Shown here: positions 8,136 through 40,284 of the stretch, one piece after another | Numbering within the stretch: position 1 is the first letter of the stretch | Layout of the letters: each line of letters begins with the position of its first letter | Made by a program: the position numbers and the translations under genes | Virus record (IMG/VR): IMGVR_UViG_3300019458_000020 | Coordinates: 186,814-250,813 of that record | Direction: 5' to 3' (one strand) | Length of the DNA stretch: 64,000 bases | The notes under the pieces: model-generated | The model's database searches: none | The model's input: only the letters and a program-made list of their open reading frames with translations | What the model was told of the DNA's origin: nothing

Positions 8136-8211
8136 TGGCGCCCCATGTGGGAGTTGAACCCACACGAAATTGTTTTAGAGACAACTGCTCTACCAATTGA
8201 GCTAATGAGGC
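8136..8211 (-). tRNA. amber suppressor tRNA (anticodon CUA)
   Basis: 76-nt canonical cloverleaf: GCCTCAT/ATGGGGC, D arm GCTC/GAGC, GTTGT-CTCTAAA-ACAAT, GTGGG-TTCAACT-CCCAC, G73, CCA. Confidence 0.92.
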
Positions 8212-10428: not shown

Positions 10429-10836
10429 TGGTGGACCTAGTTGGAGTTGAACCAACGTGTTGAAAACCAAAGATATCCAGCAACTACATGTTTAGTTCGT
10501 TTGTGTATTCGCCTGTATGATAAACGAACAAACTGTCAGGCATAGATTGGCATACTGGCCTTTCGAATCAGTCTTGTAATTAAAACCACAAGCAGTTCTC
10601 CCTCTGTTTTACGCCGTTTTTGACCTAGAGGAGTCAGTCAATACGACGGAACGGATATTAGGCCGCTACTGCGTTGAATTCGATTTCAACATTATTCATA
10701 TTGAAAGAAAAATCAACATTTTGCAAACGAGTAAGTTTAGCATTTATTTTTCCGTCATCTTTTTTAAGAGGCCAGACGACCAACCTCTACATGCTCTGTG
10801 TATCCTATAATCTTCAGTCGATACCATTATAGGCCC
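10429..10836 (-). ncRNA. ssrA: tmRNA, predicted tag AKLTRLQNVDFSFNMNNVEIEFNAVAA
   Basis: 5' GGGCCTATAATGGTATCGAC, 3' GGTTCAACTCC..TAGGTCCACCA with G3-U70; ATAAAT-GCT resume context at 10741, UAA at 10660-10658. Confidence 0.93.
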
Positions 10837-35010: not shown

Positions 35011-35021
35011 ATAAAAATTGT

Positions 35022-35096
35022 TGGAGCGGGTTGCAGGCAACGCTCACTGCACCTGACACTGGAAAGTGCCCATGATTCTCCTTTCACCAAACCCGC
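35022..35096 (-). tRNA. tRNA-Gly(UCC)-like, atypical
   Basis: GCGGGTT/AACCCGC, U73, CCA; anticodon loop appears 6 nt (TTTCCA); non-canonical T arm. Confidence 0.65.
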
Positions 35097-35139
35097 ACAC
35101 ATAACTATAGGACGGATCTATGAAAGTGTCAAAATAATT

Positions 35140-35226
35140 AAAACAGGCGGAAACTCTTTAGCGGGGTTTCTCTTATCCGTTTCCGTTAGGCGCCCACAGG
35201 CGCACAGTTATGACACTGCCTGTTTT
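35140..35226 (-). ncRNA. candidate structured RNA
   Basis: 9-bp closing stem AAAACAGGC/GCCTGTTTT with inner GGCGC and GAAAC/GTTTC stems. Confidence 0.45.
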
Positions 35227-35237
35227 GAAAAACCGAA

Positions 35238-35357
35238 TCTTAGCCGGAGGGTGCCCTCTCCATTGGTGATTACGATTCACCGGCCTCTGCAGAAGCCCTC
35301 AGGTATCCCCGAGCCGGACGTTTTACGCCGGACCTACGTTCTTTCTAATCGCTAAGA
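35238..35357 (-). ncRNA. candidate five-hairpin multibranch RNA
   Basis: TCTTAGC/GCTAAGA closing stem enclosing five consecutive hairpins; upstream TTGACA-16-TATAGT promoter. Confidence 0.55.
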
Positions 35358-35474
35358 CGTGTTAATAGTCATTCGACTCAATTACTGTCCAACTTCCATC
35401 AACAATGATACTATATCACACAGTATAAAAATGTCAAATCCAATTCTTTTAATTGAATTGATATATGTATCTCC

Positions 35475-35873
35475 ATGAAAGATAAAATCTTAGAACTTCA
35501 CAATTCAGGAAAATCATATAGAGAAATAAGACAAATTTTAGGATGTTCACATTCTCTCATTTCTTACTATGTTAACCCGGATGGCAAAACAAAACAACTC
35601 CAAAGACAAAATAAAAATCGTTTTATAAAAAGAGAAAAATACAAGTTATCTATGGGAGGAAAATGTTGTAAATGTGGATATGACCGTTGTCTTGCAGCCT
35701 TGCATTTTCATCATAAAAACCCAGAAGAAAAAAAGTTTTTGTTAAGTTCTGCTATGTGGGGAGTAAATTCAATAACCGAAGAAGATATCTTAAATGAAAT
35801 TAAGAAATGTGACTTGATTTGTGCAAATTGTCACGCAGAGTATCATTATCCAAATACTCTCAAGAAATGGTAG
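35475..35873 (+). CDS. HNH homing endonuclease with N-terminal HTH
   Basis: KCCKCGY..ALHFHH..CDLICANCHAEYH; stop overlaps the tRNA-fMet 3' end. Confidence 0.85.
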   Translation: MKDKILELHNSGKSYREIRQILGCSHSLISYYVNPDGKTKQLQRQNKNRFIKREKYKLSMGGKCCKCGYDRCLAALHFHHKNPEEKKFLLSSAMWGVNSITEEDILNEIKKCDLICANCHAEYHYPNTLKKW

Positions 35874-35942
35874 CAGGGACAGGAATCGAACCTGTGACCT
35901 TCGGGTTATGAGCCAGACGAGCTGCCACTGCTCTACCCTGCA
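35868..35942 (-). tRNA. initiator-type tRNA-Met(CAU)
   Basis: 1:72 mismatch, TCTGG-CTCATAA-CCCGA, GGTTCGATTCC, ACCA. Confidence 0.9.
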
Positions 35943-36094
35943 ATCTGTTGTCGGAGCTAAAAGCTTCTACGACGAAAATCAGCAGGCGGTTTTTATTCTC
36001 GGCTTCTTAGACCGAACCGGCTTCCTATTCGGGCCGGTGGTTCATCCGCGAACCATCTTCATACTCATTATTATATCACCGATTGTTCTGTTGT

Positions 36095-36580
36095 CAACTT
36101 GAAACGGCGATGATACGTCAACATTTTTTACCGTCTCGTGACTGTGGCTTTCATCTTCTTTCAACCAAGATGCCCACCGCTCAGGTTTAAATTCAGCCTT
36201 TTTGGTCTGCTGTAGGCCGAGGGAGCGACCCTCAACAGCGGATGGATCTCTTATTTTAAGTCGAACCCACCCTCGACGAAAGTACCGTGTCACTGTTCAT
36301 GCCGTCATCGTTTCAACTGGCTACGTTAAACCACAAGCTTCGTTTCTATTGTTTCGGCTACATGGTCCGCCATCCACTCAGGCAATTCCTAATTGATCGG
36401 AGTCGATTAACCAATTTCTAATTCTATAAACCGACCAATCTGCTCAGACACGCTAACAGGTTCGTATTTTAACTTTCCCTTTTTTGATTCACCGTCATAG
36501 GTTACACACGACGTTTTTCCGGTGACTCGACCTTCCATCTTAGCTCTCAACTTCCGAATCAACATTCACCGTTAAATAAC
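36095..36580 (-). ncRNA. candidate ~480-nt large structured RNA
   Basis: Own TTGACG-16-TATAGT promoter, long-range stem TTGAAACGATGA/TCATCGCCGTTTCAA, nested hairpins, no credible ORF. Confidence 0.55.
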
Positions 36581-36610
36581 TATACGACAGAATATAAAAA
36601 CGTCAAGTCT

Positions 36611-36787
36611 TTACAGCAATCTTTTTCTCTGGTCGCCCTTACCAACAATGTTGCCATTTCTATCACGGGTTATGTTCTCTCGTTCATTGTATTTGGCAAT
36701 AATCTTGCCAGTTCTATCACGGATAATGTCTCTATCAATTTTTCCGATGATTTTTCCCTCACGATTTCTAAGATATGCATCATTCAT
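36611..36787 (-). CDS. 58-aa beta-hairpin repeat protein (below the ORF-track cutoff)
   Basis: Three RNREGKIIG / RDRTGKIIA / RDRNGNIVG repeats. Confidence 0.65.
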   Translation of the reverse strand: MNDAYLRNREGKIIGKIDRDIIRDRTGKIIAKYNERENITRDRNGNIVGKGDQRKRLL

Positions 36788-36848
36788 ATAACGAACATAT
36801 CACAAATAAAATAATTGTCAATCGCATTCTTGTTATACATATCAGATA

Positions 36849-37681
36849 TGACAAATACATTAAAGACCGAAAAGATAAGTGGAATATACAAAATTATCAA
36901 TAATATCAATGATAAATACTACGTTGGTAGTTCAAATAACATTTACAAACGATGGAAATATCACAAGCAAGATTTAAATCGAGGCAATCACAGGTCACAA
37001 TATTTGCAACGTGCGTGGAACAAATACGGTGAAGATAATTTTACTTTTGTAGTCACCGAATTAATTATATTGGATGAATTACTTTTACAAATAGAACAAG
37101 AATATCTTAATATTGCTTGTCAAGAAAAGGAAAAATGTTATAATTCATCTTTTGTTGCTGGAAAAATTGAAATGAATGAGATTACGAGAAACAAAATAAG
37201 TCAATCTCACAAAGGAAAGAAATTATCCAAGGAAACAAAAGAAAAGTTACGGCAATGTAATTTAGGAAAAAGATTATCAGAAGAAACTAAAAAGAAAATT
37301 AGTGATGCACACAAAGGAAAAGTTTTAAGTCAACCCAAAGGATGGCATCATACCGAAGAATCAAAGAAAAAAATTAGCCAGAAATTAAAAGGAAAATATG
37401 TTGGAATATTGAGTCATAAATTTGGTACTAAACATACTGAAGAATGGAAAAAACAATGGAGAGAAAGACTGAAAAATCATCATCCGAGGTTAGACAAAAC
37501 TGTATATCGATTTCAAAACGAAGTTACCAACGAAGTTTTTGACGGGTTGCAGTTTGATTTTAGAGTAAAATATAACATTCCTCCAGGAAATTTATGTCAT
37601 ATAATTCGAGGAAGGAGAAAATCTATACAAGGATGGAAATTGGTGGTCCGACCGGGATTCGAACCCGGAACAAAGCTTTAG
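36849..37681 (+). CDS. GIY-YIG homing endonuclease with NUMOD3-type repeats
   Basis: SGIYKI..YYVGSS..HRSQYLQRAWNKYG; repeated SxETKxKIS..HKGK; convergent on tRNA-Arg. Confidence 0.9.
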
Positions 37682-38859: not shown

Positions 38860-40284
38860 TTATATACTTCTGCCCATCAGGAATCTGAAAAACTTCATTC
38901 CTTCAACCATGTCACCATCATTTAAAATACTCAGGTTGGTGATTTTAGAATTAAGACGATGACAAATTTGCTCTTCACGGGTTCCAGCAGCGAAGAGAAT
39001 TCGTTGGTAACACTTTGTTAATCCACCTTGACGATGAATTCTGCCGAGAACTTGAAGTAATTGGATAGCGGAGTAATTTGGATTGATGATTGTAGCACGG
39101 GGATGTTTACCGGTTAAATCATGAAGATTAATCGATTGCCCACCAGCAGCATTGTTAGCAATGATGATTCTTTTCCTGTCTGCATTGAAATCGGCAACGT
39201 CCTGAATTCTATCATTCACACTCTGCCCACCATAAATCAATCCAATCTTATCACGAAACTTTTTCTTGGAAGACAGACGGCGATTAATCAATTCAATGGT
39301 ATTTGTGAAGTTTACAAACACGCCAACAGACTTTCCTTCATCAAACAAGTCTTCAATCATTTCCAAAATTGTAGGCACCTTGAGCAATTCAATTTCACGA
39401 CGAGCTTTGATGATTACTGCCAAGATATGTTCGGCATACTTGGCTGTTTGTTCTTGAAGTCGAGCAATCTCATTTTCCATCCAGTCATATCTGGCTTGAA
39501 TCTTATCGGCGTTATCCATAGCGTATGCCTTGACAACGATTTGATTCTCTGGAAACAACGTACCCATTCCTTCACGGGTCAAACGAGACGATATCTTTTG
39601 AGTATCAAACAGATTTGTGTGACACAACTTCATTTTGGCTTGTGCCTCTTTATCATCATTATCGAAATACTGTGCTCCCCATTTACCTACCCATTGAGCA
39701 CCGTAATCAATACAAAAGTCATTGAAATCCGAAAGCTTATGGAGATTGACAGTATAACCAAACGCCTTCATCTCAAGAGGATTTGTGGCTTGAGTGGCAG
39801 ACAACAGAAGACAACGATATCCTTGACGTTTCAAGGCAATCATCAATCCTGCATTAAGACTTGATGGACCTTTACACTTATGAGATTCATCCAAGATAAC
39901 CAAACATCCTGGCGGCAGCTTCAATTCAGCAGTAAGAAACCTTTCCACCTTGTGCGTTTTCTTTGTGGAACGTATCAACACATCGTCGGCCTTTGGCTTC
40001 TTATACTTCAAATATTTGGTATTACCACGACAAAGCTTTTCGTAATTGATGATAATGGTTGGCTTCAATCCATACAAAGCCAATGTAGCAACCCAGTCAG
40101 GCATTACCATCTTCGGGCAAATAACAACGATTGGACAATTCATTCCCCTTGCGATACAAGAGGCGACGTGAGTTTTTCCACAACCTGTTTCCGACAAGTC
40201 AGCAGCCACACCATTAAGGTAAAGGCTGTCAATGAGAGTCATTGCATGGGCCTTTTGAGGGTCAAGAAGTCCGGTAAGATTCAT
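38860..40284 (-). CDS. superfamily II (SNF2/DEAD-like) helicase
   Basis: SETGCGKT, ILDESH, SAT, QVLGRIHR. Confidence 0.92.
   Translation of the reverse strand: MNLTGLLDPQKAHAMTLIDSLYLNGVAADLSETGCGKTHVASCIARGMNCPIVVICPKMVMPDWVATLALYGLKPTIIINYEKLCRGNTKYLKYKKPKADDVLIRSTKKTHKVERFLTAELKLPPGCLVILDESHKCKGPSSLNAGLMIALKRQGYRCLLLSATQATNPLEMKAFGYTVNLHKLSDFNDFCIDYGAQWVGKWGAQYFDNDDKEAQAKMKLCHTNLFDTQKISSRLTREGMGTLFPENQIVVKAYAMDNADKIQARYDWMENEIARLQEQTAKYAEHILAVIIKARREIELLKVPTILEMIEDLFDEGKSVGVFVNFTNTIELINRRLSSKKKFRDKIGLIYGGQSVNDRIQDVADFNADRKRIIIANNAAGGQSINLHDLTGKHPRATIINPNYSAIQLLQVLGRIHRQGGLTKCYQRILFAAGTREEQICHRLNSKITNLSILNDGDMVEGMKFFRFLMGRSI

What the first reader, a model, noticed from the sequence alone, without database searches (positions are those of the whole stretch)
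36095..36580. ~480-nt large structured RNA candidate beside the initiator tRNA
Seen: dedicated promoter and no credible ORF. A ~220-nt domain is closed by TTGAAACGATGA/TCATCGCCGTTTCAA, with inner GTGAC/GTCAC, GGGTGG/CCATCC, GCTGT/ACAGC, GAGGG/CCCTC and CATCTT/AAGATG stems. A 5' domain has GATTC..TCACCG/GGTGAATC. A further hairpin cluster lies at 35945-36065. Established: phages carry large tRNA-associated ncRNAs (GOLLD, ROOL) of unclear function. I cannot assign this one to either family.
Basis: partly seen in the sequence, partly recalled or inferred. Interest (0 to 1): 0.65.

Follow-up and report, generated by a model that had tools for sequence, protein, structure and literature searches.

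The report
Structured leader RNA of phage initiator tRNA
A huge phage carries a conserved, non-coding, folded RNA of about 480 bases, with its own promoter, just upstream of its initiator-type methionine tRNA; its old core is a hairpin that reads as two linked kink-turns locked by a pseudoknot, it matches no described RNA family, and its function is unknown.

Summary
It lies on the minus strand of a ~341-kb phage from a cave metagenome.

- **Transcription:** a strong sigma-70-type promoter (36606..36579) heads an ORF-free stretch. This runs into a second, perfect promoter (36097..36070), a 120-nt structured leader, and an initiator-like tRNA-Met (35942-35868).
- **Relatives:** four related phages keep the locus. 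Blocks are near-invariant, hairpins are swapped or inserted, and no reading frame is conserved.
- **Supported structure:** compensatory changes support a local 3' helix, hairpin CAUCUU/AAGAUG, three leader hairpins, a long irregular hairpin (36383-36301) and a loop-to-linker pseudoknot.
- **Not supported:** Three other stems lie in an insertion found only in this phage.
- **Core:** the irregular hairpin recurs in distant relatives (helicase ~55% identical), 17-44 nt upstream of tRNA-Met. Its two 3x6 loops fit the kink-turn consensus as a double kink-turn.
- **Family:** Rfam 15 (including GOLLD, ROOL, introns, T-box, RNase P) gives nothing.

Best reading: an expanded structured 5' leader or co-transcript of the phage initiator tRNA. 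No RNA reads exist.

The parts
36579..36606 (-). Promoter P1: TTGACG, 16-nt spacer, TATAGT. The inferred start is near 36572.
   Evidence: All 28 nt plus the following TATTT are invariant in the five clade members. The exact pattern occurs only in the two related IMG/VR contigs. The start site is inferred, not measured.
36519..36572 (-). 5'-terminal stem-loop: CGGUGA (36570-36565) pairs with UCACCG (36525-36520). The loop carries the conserved motif CGAAAGCGAAG(AUGGAAG), which in the window reads GUUGAGAGCUAAGAUGGAAGG (36551-36531).
   Evidence: Every member can pair its first bases with a downstream segment of different sequence: GGUAAG/CUUACU in L002, UGGUAAGUUU/AAACUUAUCA in L083, AUCGGUGAC/GUUGCCGAU in L003, AGAUUGAUU/AAUCAAUCU in L077. 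L002, L083 and L003 are from single-sequence folds. The window and L077 pairs are read from the sequences printed there; their minimum-energy folds differ. This region aligns poorly, so support is by structure replacement, not column covariation.
36440..36460 (-). Hairpin S3: CCUGUU / AGCAG with loop AGCGUGUCUG. Loop bases CGUGUC (36452-36447) pair with GACACG (36291-36286) to form a pseudoknot.
   Evidence: The stem covaries: CUGUU/AGCAG, CCGCU/AGCGG, CCGUU/AGCGG, GGCGG/CCGCC. Loop-to-linker pairing holds in 90% of cells in register against at most 50% when slid. L077 changes two pairs on both sides. In L124, L126 and L090 a hairpin loop pairs with the homologous linker using other sequences: GAAGGA/UCCUUC, GAGAGAUG/CAUCUCUC, GAGGGAU/AUCCCUC.
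36395..36436 (-). Clade-variable hairpin, present in the window, L002 and L003 and absent in L083 and L077.
   Evidence: Alignment A5; fold.
36301..36385 (-). Long irregular hairpin, the conserved core.
- Helix 1: GCC 36383-36381 with GGC 36303-36301.
- Lower 3x6 loop: U36380 G36379 A36378 opposite G36309 A36308 U36307 G36306 A36305 C36304.
- Helix 2: GU 36377-36376 with AC 36311-36310.
- Upper 3x6 loop: G36375 G36374 A36373 opposite G36317 U36316 U36315 G36314 A36313 A36312.
- Helix 3: UGG 36372-36370 with CCA 36320-36318.
- Variable tip hairpin: 36369-36325.
   Evidence: RNAalifold found the helices. On 5 sequences 100% of cells pair and 4 of 8 pairs change on both sides. On 8 sequences 100% pair, 5 of 8 pairs change on both sides, and pair 7-115 shows four pair types (that alignment is model-fitted). 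Model R3 hits L124 (40.5 bits, E 1.4e-7), L126 and L127 (25.5 bits, E 8e-4) and L090 (17 bits), all just upstream of tRNA-Met. All G and A positions required for tandem G.A pairs are invariant in 8 of 8. The tip hairpin differs in sequence in every lineage.
36279..36300 (-). Linker AUGAACAGUGACACGGUACUUU. It carries the 3' strand of the pseudoknot (36291-36286) and ends in the invariant CUUU.
36186..36278 (-). Insertion specific to this phage. It holds the hairpins GGGUGG/CCAUCC, GCUGU/ACAGC and GAGGG/CCCUC.
   Evidence: Absent in L002 and L077. A different ~95-nt insert is present in L083 and a ~215-nt one in L003, at the same point.
36142..36185 (-). Hairpin CUG-AGC-GGU-GGG-CAUCUU...AAGAUG-AAA-GCC-A-CAG, nearly invariant within the clade.
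   Evidence: U-A changes to G-C in L003; the other pairs never vary. Model R2 does not find it outside the clade.
36101..36137 (-). Local hairpin GAGACGGU / GCCGUUUC with a 21-nt loop that holds the invariant GGUAAA and UAUCAYCG.
Evidence: four of eight pairs change on both sides (A-U/U-A/C-G, G-U/A-U/G-C, C-G/U-A).
36070..36097 (-). Promoter P2: TTGACA, 16 nt, TGaTATAAT, a 12/12 match with an extended -10.
   Evidence: The hexamers are invariant, while the spacer varies in L077, as expected of a working promoter rather than an RNA helix.
35985..36055 (-). tRNA leader: three abutting hairpins, H1 36055-36038, H2 36037-36017 and H3 36016-35998 (loop CUAAGAA), followed by AAUAAAAACCGCC.
   Evidence: 96.8% of cells pair, 5 pairs change on both sides, and pairs 27-47 and 29-45 each show three or more pair types. 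Slid controls pair at 56% or less. Model R1 finds this only within the clade.
35950..35973 (-). Variable last hairpin of the leader, GUCG..CGAC.
   Evidence: Relatives carry other hairpins here.
35868..35942 (-). tRNA-Met (CAU), initiator-like, with an encoded CCA.
   Evidence: It shows a 1-72 mismatch and an anticodon arm close to that of bacterial tRNA-fMet (read plus my own knowledge).

Best explanation
This is a genuine non-coding, structured RNA: the greatly expanded 5' leader or co-transcript of the phage's initiator-type tRNA-Met.

**Transcription (inferred).** It starts at P1 near 36572. No terminator precedes the tRNA, so transcripts run through P2 and the 120-nt leader into tRNA-Met. 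P2 adds further tRNA transcripts. RNase P cutting at the tRNA 5' end, and probably RNase E in the AU-rich linkers, would release the upstream RNA.

**Structure (shown).**
- A 5'-terminal stem-loop.
- Hairpin S3, whose loop pairs with the linker downstream of the core hairpin, forming a pseudoknot.
- A long irregular hairpin whose two 3x6 internal loops fit the kink-turn consensus. The non-canonical helix of the upper one serves as the canonical helix of the lower one, which makes a 'double kink-turn'.
- Clade-specific additions: the 36142-36185 hairpin, the 36101-36137 hairpin, promoter P2 and leader hairpins H1-H3.

**Ancestry (shown).** In distant relatives the pseudoknotted double-kink-turn module sits 17-44 nt before tRNA-Met, so that module is the ancestral, selected part.

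**Function (inferred, weakest step).** The two kinks would fold the hairpin back into a compact body. This body may act in cis on the nascent tRNA precursor, for folding, processing or protection, or as a docking site for a protein. It then persists as a processed by-product.
For: - **Promoters:**
- **No conserved ORF in six frames, with indels not in threes:**
- **Mosaic conservation:** some blocks are 100% identical while the neighbouring helicase gene is 76-82% identical at DNA level.
- **Covariation:**
- **Structure-preserving replacement of hairpins:**
- **R3 module upstream of tRNA-Met in L124, L126, L127 and L090:**
- **No terminator-like site between P1 and the tRNA on the minus strand:**; likewise in L126.
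- **Kink-turn definition and double kink-turn precedent:** PMC5499556.
- **Invariant G.A positions:**
- **Single copy in the 250.8-kb record held for this phage:**
Against: - There is no expression data. The only sequencing runs holding this DNA are two DNA runs of the source cave metagenome.
- Only 5 close and 3 distant distinct sequences exist, so the covariation statistics are weak. The 8-sequence alignment was fitted to the model.
- The kink-turn assignment rests on sequence pattern alone, and helix 2 has only two Watson-Crick pairs.
- No L7Ae-type protein is encoded in the 250-kb record.
- Relatives with a 62-64% identical helicase keep an ORF-free stretch before tRNA-Met (L085, L089) but give no hit to any model. 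L087 has almost no leader. The module is therefore dispensable or fast-evolving.
- An own strong promoter and a second promoter in front of the tRNA could equally mean that the upstream RNA is an independent gene.
Confidence: 0.6

Rival explanations
1. It is an independent, trans-acting stable RNA of the GOLLD/ROOL kind. On this reading it is a phage RNA parked in a tRNA island, which uses the downstream tRNA only as a 3'-end processing signal. Its conserved loops would bind a host or phage partner, or drive self-assembly.
For: - It has its own invariant strong promoter, and a separate promoter serves the tRNA.
- Unpaired blocks are very highly conserved, for example 36142-36185.
- The 3' part is more conserved than the 5' part, and it lies next to tRNA-Met in a phage tRNA island. 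This matches the description of GOLLD in the cryo-EM preprint 10.1101/2024.12.08.627333.
Against: - There is no similarity to the GOLLD or ROOL models.
- The oldest module lies inside the tRNA-Met leader with no promoter in between in distant relatives (scanned in L126).
- No terminator or defined 3' end is present.
- The clade-specific modules are young.
Confidence: 0.25
2. It is a cis-acting sensor (riboswitch-like or T-box-like) that controls read-through or maturation of the initiator tRNA in response to a ligand, a protein or a tRNA.
For: - Kink-turn plus loop-linker pseudoknot architecture is typical of several riboswitch aptamers (my own knowledge).
- The module sits directly upstream of the gene it could control, and in distant relatives it is followed by the conserved CUCGAUUUUU.
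- An AUGA sequence is conserved in the lower loop.
Against: - No terminator, anti-terminator or other expression platform was found.
- The T-box model does not match.
- The conserved AUG overlaps the G of the G.A pair, so it is explained by the kink-turn consensus GAUGA.
- In this clade promoter P2 bypasses the module.
Confidence: 0.1
3. It is non-functional DNA: a degraded intron, a homing-endonuclease scar, a dead gene, or merely a spacer between promoters.
For: - Two free-standing homing-endonuclease genes flank the locus.
- Large lineage-specific insertions are present.
- The single-sequence fold is not better than shuffles.
Against: - Compensatory changes occur in at least six helices.
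- Some blocks are more conserved than the neighbouring protein genes.
- The endonuclease genes are absent from relatives that keep the RNA.
- No intron model matches, and no frame is conserved.
Confidence: 0.04

Closest known systems
GOLLD and ROOL RNAs (large ornate RNAs of phages and prophages)
   Same: They are phage-borne, several hundred nucleotides long, non-coding and of unknown function. They are often found in tRNA islands. GOLLD has a conserved 3' and a variable 5' part, and one example lies next to tRNA-Met (preprint 10.1101/2024.12.08.627333).
   Different: There is no match to either Rfam model at E <= 10 in the window or in relatives. This RNA is smaller in its conserved core (~170-200 nt). 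It is a chain of mostly local hairpins with a single pseudoknot. It lies upstream of the tRNA and is co-oriented with it, with promoters on both sides.
Double kink-turn module of euryarchaeal RNase P RNA helix P12 (PMC5499556)
   Same: Two kink-turn-type loops sit on the same strand, and the non-canonical helix of one is the canonical helix of the next. Each has a 3-nt bulge followed by G.A and A.G. A fold-back of a long hairpin is predicted.
   Different: The setting is a different RNA, a different domain of life and a bacterial virus. The shared helix here has five stacked pairs, three of them purine-purine, rather than three. No L7Ae homologue is encoded in the phage record. Folding has not been tested.
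Phage T4 tRNA-cluster stable RNAs (species 1 and 2, rnaC/rnaD), from my own knowledge
   Same: They are small, stable, structured RNAs of unknown function that are co-transcribed with phage tRNAs and cut out of the precursor. The T4 tRNA region also holds a free-standing homing endonuclease.
   Different: The T4 RNAs are much shorter, at roughly 120-140 nt. Co-transcription and processing are only inferred for this locus.
T-box leader Stem I
   Same: It is a long irregular hairpin with a GA (kink-turn) motif near its base, it is linked to tRNA biology, and a pseudoknot lies nearby.
   Different: The kink-turn bulged strand is on the 3' side here. There is no specifier loop, no T-box sequence, no terminator and no Rfam match. 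This element precedes a tRNA gene, not an aminoacyl-tRNA synthetase gene.

Membership tests
GOLLD RNA | Match to the curated Rfam covariance model (conserved 3' domain) | tested here: not met
   No match at gathering score or at E <= 10 on window 35700-36900 and on relatives L002, L077 and L003.
ROOL RNA | Match to the curated Rfam covariance model | tested here: not met
   Same searches.
Group I / group II introns | Match to intron covariance models, and an interrupted host gene | tested here: not met
   No Rfam match. The flanks are a small ORF and a complete tRNA. The two endonuclease ORFs are on the other strand and are absent in L002.
T-box riboswitch | Stem I with specifier loop, T-box sequence and terminator/antiterminator; match to the Rfam model | tested here: not met
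   No Rfam match and no terminator. The conserved AUG overlaps a G.A pair.
Bacterial RNase P RNA, tmRNA, SRP RNA, 6S RNA | Match to the Rfam models | tested here: not met
   The only tmRNA match in the window is at 10429-10836.
Kink-turn motif | On the bulged strand, a canonical helix, then a 3-nt bulge, then G.A and A.G pairs opening the non-canonical helix (definition in PMC5499556) | tested here: met
   The sequence pattern is met twice. Lower: AC / GAU / G36306 A36305 opposite G36379 A36378. Upper: CCA / GUU / G36314 A36313 opposite G36374 A36373. All eight G/A positions are invariant in 8 of 8 sequences.
Kink-turn motif | A tightly kinked three-dimensional conformation, or L7Ae-family binding | not testable with these tools
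   No RNA 3D or binding tool is available. No L7Ae-family gene is present in the phage record.
Double kink-turn module | The non-canonical helix of one kink-turn also serves as the canonical helix of the next (PMC5499556) | tested here: met
   The stretch G36314 A36313 A36312 A36311 C36310 opposite G36377 U36376 G36375 G36374 A36373 is shared by both loops. This holds at the level of sequence and secondary structure only.
tRNA 5' leader / co-transcript | Same strand as the tRNA, upstream of it, with no terminator between its promoter and the tRNA | tested here: met
   In L126, L127 and L090 the core module lies 17-44 nt before tRNA-Met with no promoter between (scanned in L126).
tRNA 5' leader / co-transcript | A physical transcript joining the RNA to the tRNA, and RNase P release | not testable with these tools
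   No RNA runs hold this sequence.

The most novel reading that the evidence does not exclude
The pseudoknotted double-kink-turn module may be a new class of cis-acting RNA device dedicated to a viral initiator tRNA. It would fold back onto, or recruit a factor to, the nascent tRNA-fMet-like precursor, and so control the tRNA's maturation, its protection from host nucleases, or its delivery to initiation. If so, it would be the first bacterial-virus example of the double kink-turn, which is so far known only from archaeal RNase P RNA.
Probability: 0.15. Interest if true: 0.85.

Novelty: new variant of a known kind. Interest (0 to 1): 0.6.

Why it matters
Huge phages carry large tRNA sets, and the RNA that lies between those tRNAs is almost unexplored. 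This locus shows that a phage initiator tRNA comes with a conserved, elaborately folded upstream RNA that no database describes.

- Its core may add a second natural example of the double kink-turn. The paper that described that module explicitly asked others to look for more (PMC5499556).
- The core is small enough, at about 170-200 nt in L002 and L077, for direct probing, crystallography or cryo-EM.
- If the RNA acts on the initiator tRNA, it would bear on how huge phages take over translation initiation.
- If it is only a processed spacer, it still marks a reusable signature for finding tRNA-Met genes and transcription units in this phage group.

Tried and rejected
**Searches that found nothing useful**
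- **Rfam:** gathering and E <= 10 scans on the window and on L002, L077, L003, L087 and L124 gave only noise.
- **Paralogues in the phage:** none by nhmmer, blastn or model R3.
- **INPHARED phages by blastn:** only a tRNA match.
- **IMG/VR:** exact 28-mer, 15-mer, P1 pattern, kink-turn pattern and helicase profile found only the two relatives L002 and L003, plus chance hits and relatives with helicase identity of 52% or less.
- **Metagenome pattern scan:** one new member, L077.
- **Genome collection scan:** 12 matches, none confirmed. Each is on a bacterial or archaeal MAG or isolate contig, about what a 21-base gapped pattern gives by chance. They were not scored with nhmmer or the models.
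- **Sequencing runs:** DNA of the source sample only.
- **Adjacent small proteins:** no informative Pfam family.

**Models**
- R1 (leader hairpins) and R2 (3' hairpins) find nothing outside the clade.
- R3 finds nothing in L085 or L089.

**Ideas considered and dropped**
- **RNase P-like RNA:** motifs such as GAUGAAAGCCACAG and ACGGUAAA recalled conserved regions, but there is no P4-type long-range pairing and no Rfam score.
- **T-box specifier AUG:** explained by the kink-turn consensus.
- **SRP-like tRNA-Glu leader:** no Rfam score.
- **Alternative genetic code:** although a CUA-anticodon tRNA is present, TAG=Q and table 4 open no conserved frame.
- **UAUCAYCG pairing with YGGUGRUA in promoter P2:** 8 bp, but only G-U-type changes. 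It cannot be told apart from joint conservation.
- **Pseudoknot complementarity in single sequences:** not significant against shuffles. Its support comes from homologous position and compensatory changes.

Full report
**Setting.** The window is bases 186814-250813 of a 250.8-kb IMG/VR virus record. The same sequence lies on a 340.9-kb metagenome contig (L075) from a cave metagenome. The phage carries 41 tRNA genes and a tmRNA.

The finding lies on the minus strand, so it is read from high to low coordinates. The local order on that strand is:
- a 58-aa ORF with weak beta-flower similarity (36787-36611);
- promoter P1 (36606..36579);
- about 475 nt without a gene;
- promoter P2 (36097..36070), a 12/12 match with an extended -10;
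- a 120-nt leader;
- tRNA-Met (35942-35868), which is initiator-like.

Two ORFs on the opposite strand flank the locus: a GIY-YIG/NUMOD3 gene (36815-37681) and an HNH-type gene (35475-35873). A 91%-identical-helicase relative lacks both, so they are free-standing homing endonucleases inserted between RNA genes.

**The observation.**
- The promoter and the lack of a credible ORF are confirmed.
- The minimum-energy fold of the 658-nt stretch is no better than shuffles (z = -1.2). The sequence alone therefore proves nothing, and the case rests on comparison.

**Relatives.** The neighbouring SNF2-type helicase (38860-40284) served as an anchor, together with one DNA pattern. This retrieved four other phages that keep the locus:
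- L002 (helicase 91% aa identity);
- L083 (89%);
- L077 (83%);
- L003 (81%).

The alignment (A5) is a mosaic.
- P1, including its spacer, is invariant.
- Blocks such as CCUGAGCGGUGGGCA..GAAAGCCACAGUCA are 98-100% identical, whereas the helicase gene is only 76-82% identical at DNA level.
- Between the blocks, hairpins are replaced by unrelated hairpins or by insertions of 0, 93, ~95 or ~215 nt.
- No open frame is shared in any of the six frames, and the indels are not multiples of three.

This pattern is that of a structured RNA, not of a gene or a decaying remnant.

**Which pairings are real.**

*Supported by compensatory change:*
- The local hairpin GAGACGGU/GCCGUUUC (36137-36101): four of eight pairs change on both sides.
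- Hairpin CAUCUU/AAGAUG within 36185-36142: one compensatory change.
- Three abutting leader hairpins H1-H3 (36055-35998): five pairs change on both sides, 97% of cells pair, and slid controls pair at 56% or less.
- A long irregular hairpin (36383-36301) with three short helices: 100% of cells pair and four of eight pairs covary.
- Hairpin S3 (36460-36440). Its loop CGUGUC pairs with GACACG in the linker behind the irregular hairpin. L077 has GGUGCC/GGCACC and L003 has GGUGU/ACACC.
- A 5'-terminal stem that has a different sequence in every member.

*Not supported:*
Its 3' arm is used by the local hairpin instead.
- GTGAC/GTCAC fails as well: in alignment A5 the 3' GUCA is invariant while the 5' partner becomes CAAAC (L003) or UAGGC (L077).
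- GGGTGG/CCATCC, GCTGT/ACAGC and GAGGG/CCCTC lie in the insertion found only in this phage (36186-36278).

**The old core.** Three covariance models were built: R1 for the leader hairpins, R2 for the 3' hairpins and R3 for the irregular hairpin.
- R1 and R2 find nothing outside the five-member clade.
- R3 finds the hairpin in much more distant phages (helicase about 55% identical): L124 (40.5 bits, E 1.4e-7), L126 and L127 (25.5 bits, E 8e-4) and L090 (17 bits).
- In L126, L127 and L090 the hit ends 17-44 nt upstream of tRNA-Met on the same strand. In L124 it ends 44 nt before a tRNA-Met-like sequence that neither ARAGORN nor Rfam calls.
- A strong promoter lies 330-400 nt further upstream. 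The only promoter-like site between the module and the tRNA in L126 is a weak 9/12 match that runs into the tRNA.
- With these sequences, helix 1 shows four different pair types at one position and all 64 cells pair (on a model-fitted alignment).
- The loop-to-linker pairing recurs with new sequences at the homologous place. The pairs are GAGAGAUG/CAUCUCUC in L126, GAGGGAU/AUCCCUC in L090 and GAAGGA/UCCUUC in L124. In each case the 5' strand sits in a small hairpin loop.

The ancestral unit is therefore hairpin S3, the irregular hairpin, and the linker that pairs with the S3 loop, lying inside the tRNA-Met leader. In the window's clade this unit has been pushed away from the tRNA by two more hairpins, a second promoter and a new three-hairpin leader.

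Relatives at an intermediate distance of 62-64% keep an ORF-free stretch before tRNA-Met (L085, L089). One has almost none (L087). None gives a model hit. The element therefore evolves fast or can be lost.

**Reading the core.** Both internal loops of the irregular hairpin are 3x6.
- On the 3' strand each has a Watson-Crick helix, then three unpaired bases, then G-A.
- On the 5' strand each has G-A directly before the Watson-Crick helix.
- This is the kink-turn pattern as defined in PMC5499556.
- All eight G/A positions are invariant in the eight sequences.
- The purine-purine helix of the upper loop, continued by the two Watson-Crick pairs of helix 2, is also the canonical helix of the lower loop. 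That is the definition of the 'double kink-turn' described for helix P12 of euryarchaeal RNase P RNA.

This reading follows from sequence and secondary structure only. The phage record encodes no L7Ae-family protein. The conserved GAUGA contains AUG, but its G is needed for the G.A pair, so I do not read it as a T-box-like specifier.

**What it is not.** Rfam 15 was scanned at gathering score and at E <= 10 on the window and on three relatives. No match appeared to GOLLD, ROOL, group I or II introns, T-box, RNase P, SRP, 6S or any ribozyme or riboswitch. The resemblance to GOLLD and ROOL is one of setting only: both occur in phage tRNA islands, and one GOLLD lies next to tRNA-Met.

**Mechanism.**
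- *Shown:* two conserved promoters, no terminator-like site before the tRNA on the minus strand, conserved pairing, and linkage of the core to tRNA-Met across a wide phage group.
- *Inferred:* P1 transcripts read through into the tRNA. RNase P, and probably RNase E in the AU-rich linkers, cut the upstream RNA free. The double kink folds the hairpin back, and the pseudoknot locks a compact body.
- *Least certain:* what that body does. I favour a cis role on the nascent initiator-tRNA precursor, in folding, processing, protection or recruitment of a factor, because the module keeps its place in front of this one tRNA.
- *Alternatives:* an independent trans-acting RNA is the main rival. A ligand- or tRNA-sensing switch is possible but has no visible expression platform.

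**Limits.**
- There are eight distinct sequences and no RNA reads.
- The host is unknown.
- The quota of models and metagenome scans was exhausted before a joint model of the whole core could be searched widely.

Noticed in passing
window 35011-35104 (-), with promoter 35132..35104: The tRNA-Glu leader is a second conserved structured element, with closing helix GCGGGUU/AACCCGC. Homologues with a covarying closing helix occur in L085 (12900-13010) and in L087 (9000-9110), where it is stand-alone with its own promoter and a T-run. Further homologues are in L126, L090 and L089. It has no Rfam match.
   Followed up: partly
window 35133-35403 (-), behind promoter 35437..35410: This is another ORF-free stretch of ~270 nt with its own strong promoter, conserved in L002, L003, L083 and L077. 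It is a further candidate RNA with the same 'promoter-RNA-promoter-leader-tRNA' layout.
   Followed up: no
window 35475-35873 (+) and 36815-37681 (+): An HNH-type ORF (Pfam sees only its N-terminal HTH) and a GIY-YIG/NUMOD3 ORF lie on the opposite strand between the RNA genes. Both have about 30% GC. L002 has neither at these places, so they are free-standing homing endonucleases.
   Followed up: partly
L083 about 7880-7990 (A5 columns 1139-1174); L085 12800-12888; L124 8687-8774: The tRNA-Met of L083 carries a 36-nt insertion in the anticodon loop. The tRNA-Met-like genes of L085 and L124 have long extra arms and are not called by ARAGORN; L124 is also not called by Rfam.
   Followed up: no
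window 8136-8211 (-) and 10429-10836 (-): There is a tRNA with anticodon CUA (an amber reader, which ARAGORN labels Pyl) and a phage tmRNA. Reading TAG as a sense codon opened no conserved frame in the region studied.
   Followed up: partly
window 36109-36116 and 36075-36082 (-): The invariant UAUCAYCG in the loop of the 36101-36137 hairpin is complementary over 8 bp to YGGUGRUA inside promoter P2. Only G-U-type changes are seen, so a read-through-specific alternative hairpin can be neither supported nor excluded.
   Followed up: partly
L126 7640-7725: Four to five tandem copies of GCAGUAGUAGUAAAAAA lie inside the tRNA-Met leader of a distant relative.
   Followed up: no
window 36611-36787 (-): A 58-aa ORF made of GKI/GNI repeats shows weak beta-flower Pfam similarity. 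It lies directly upstream of P1 in all five clade members, and also in L085 and L089, which lack the recognisable RNA.
   Followed up: partly
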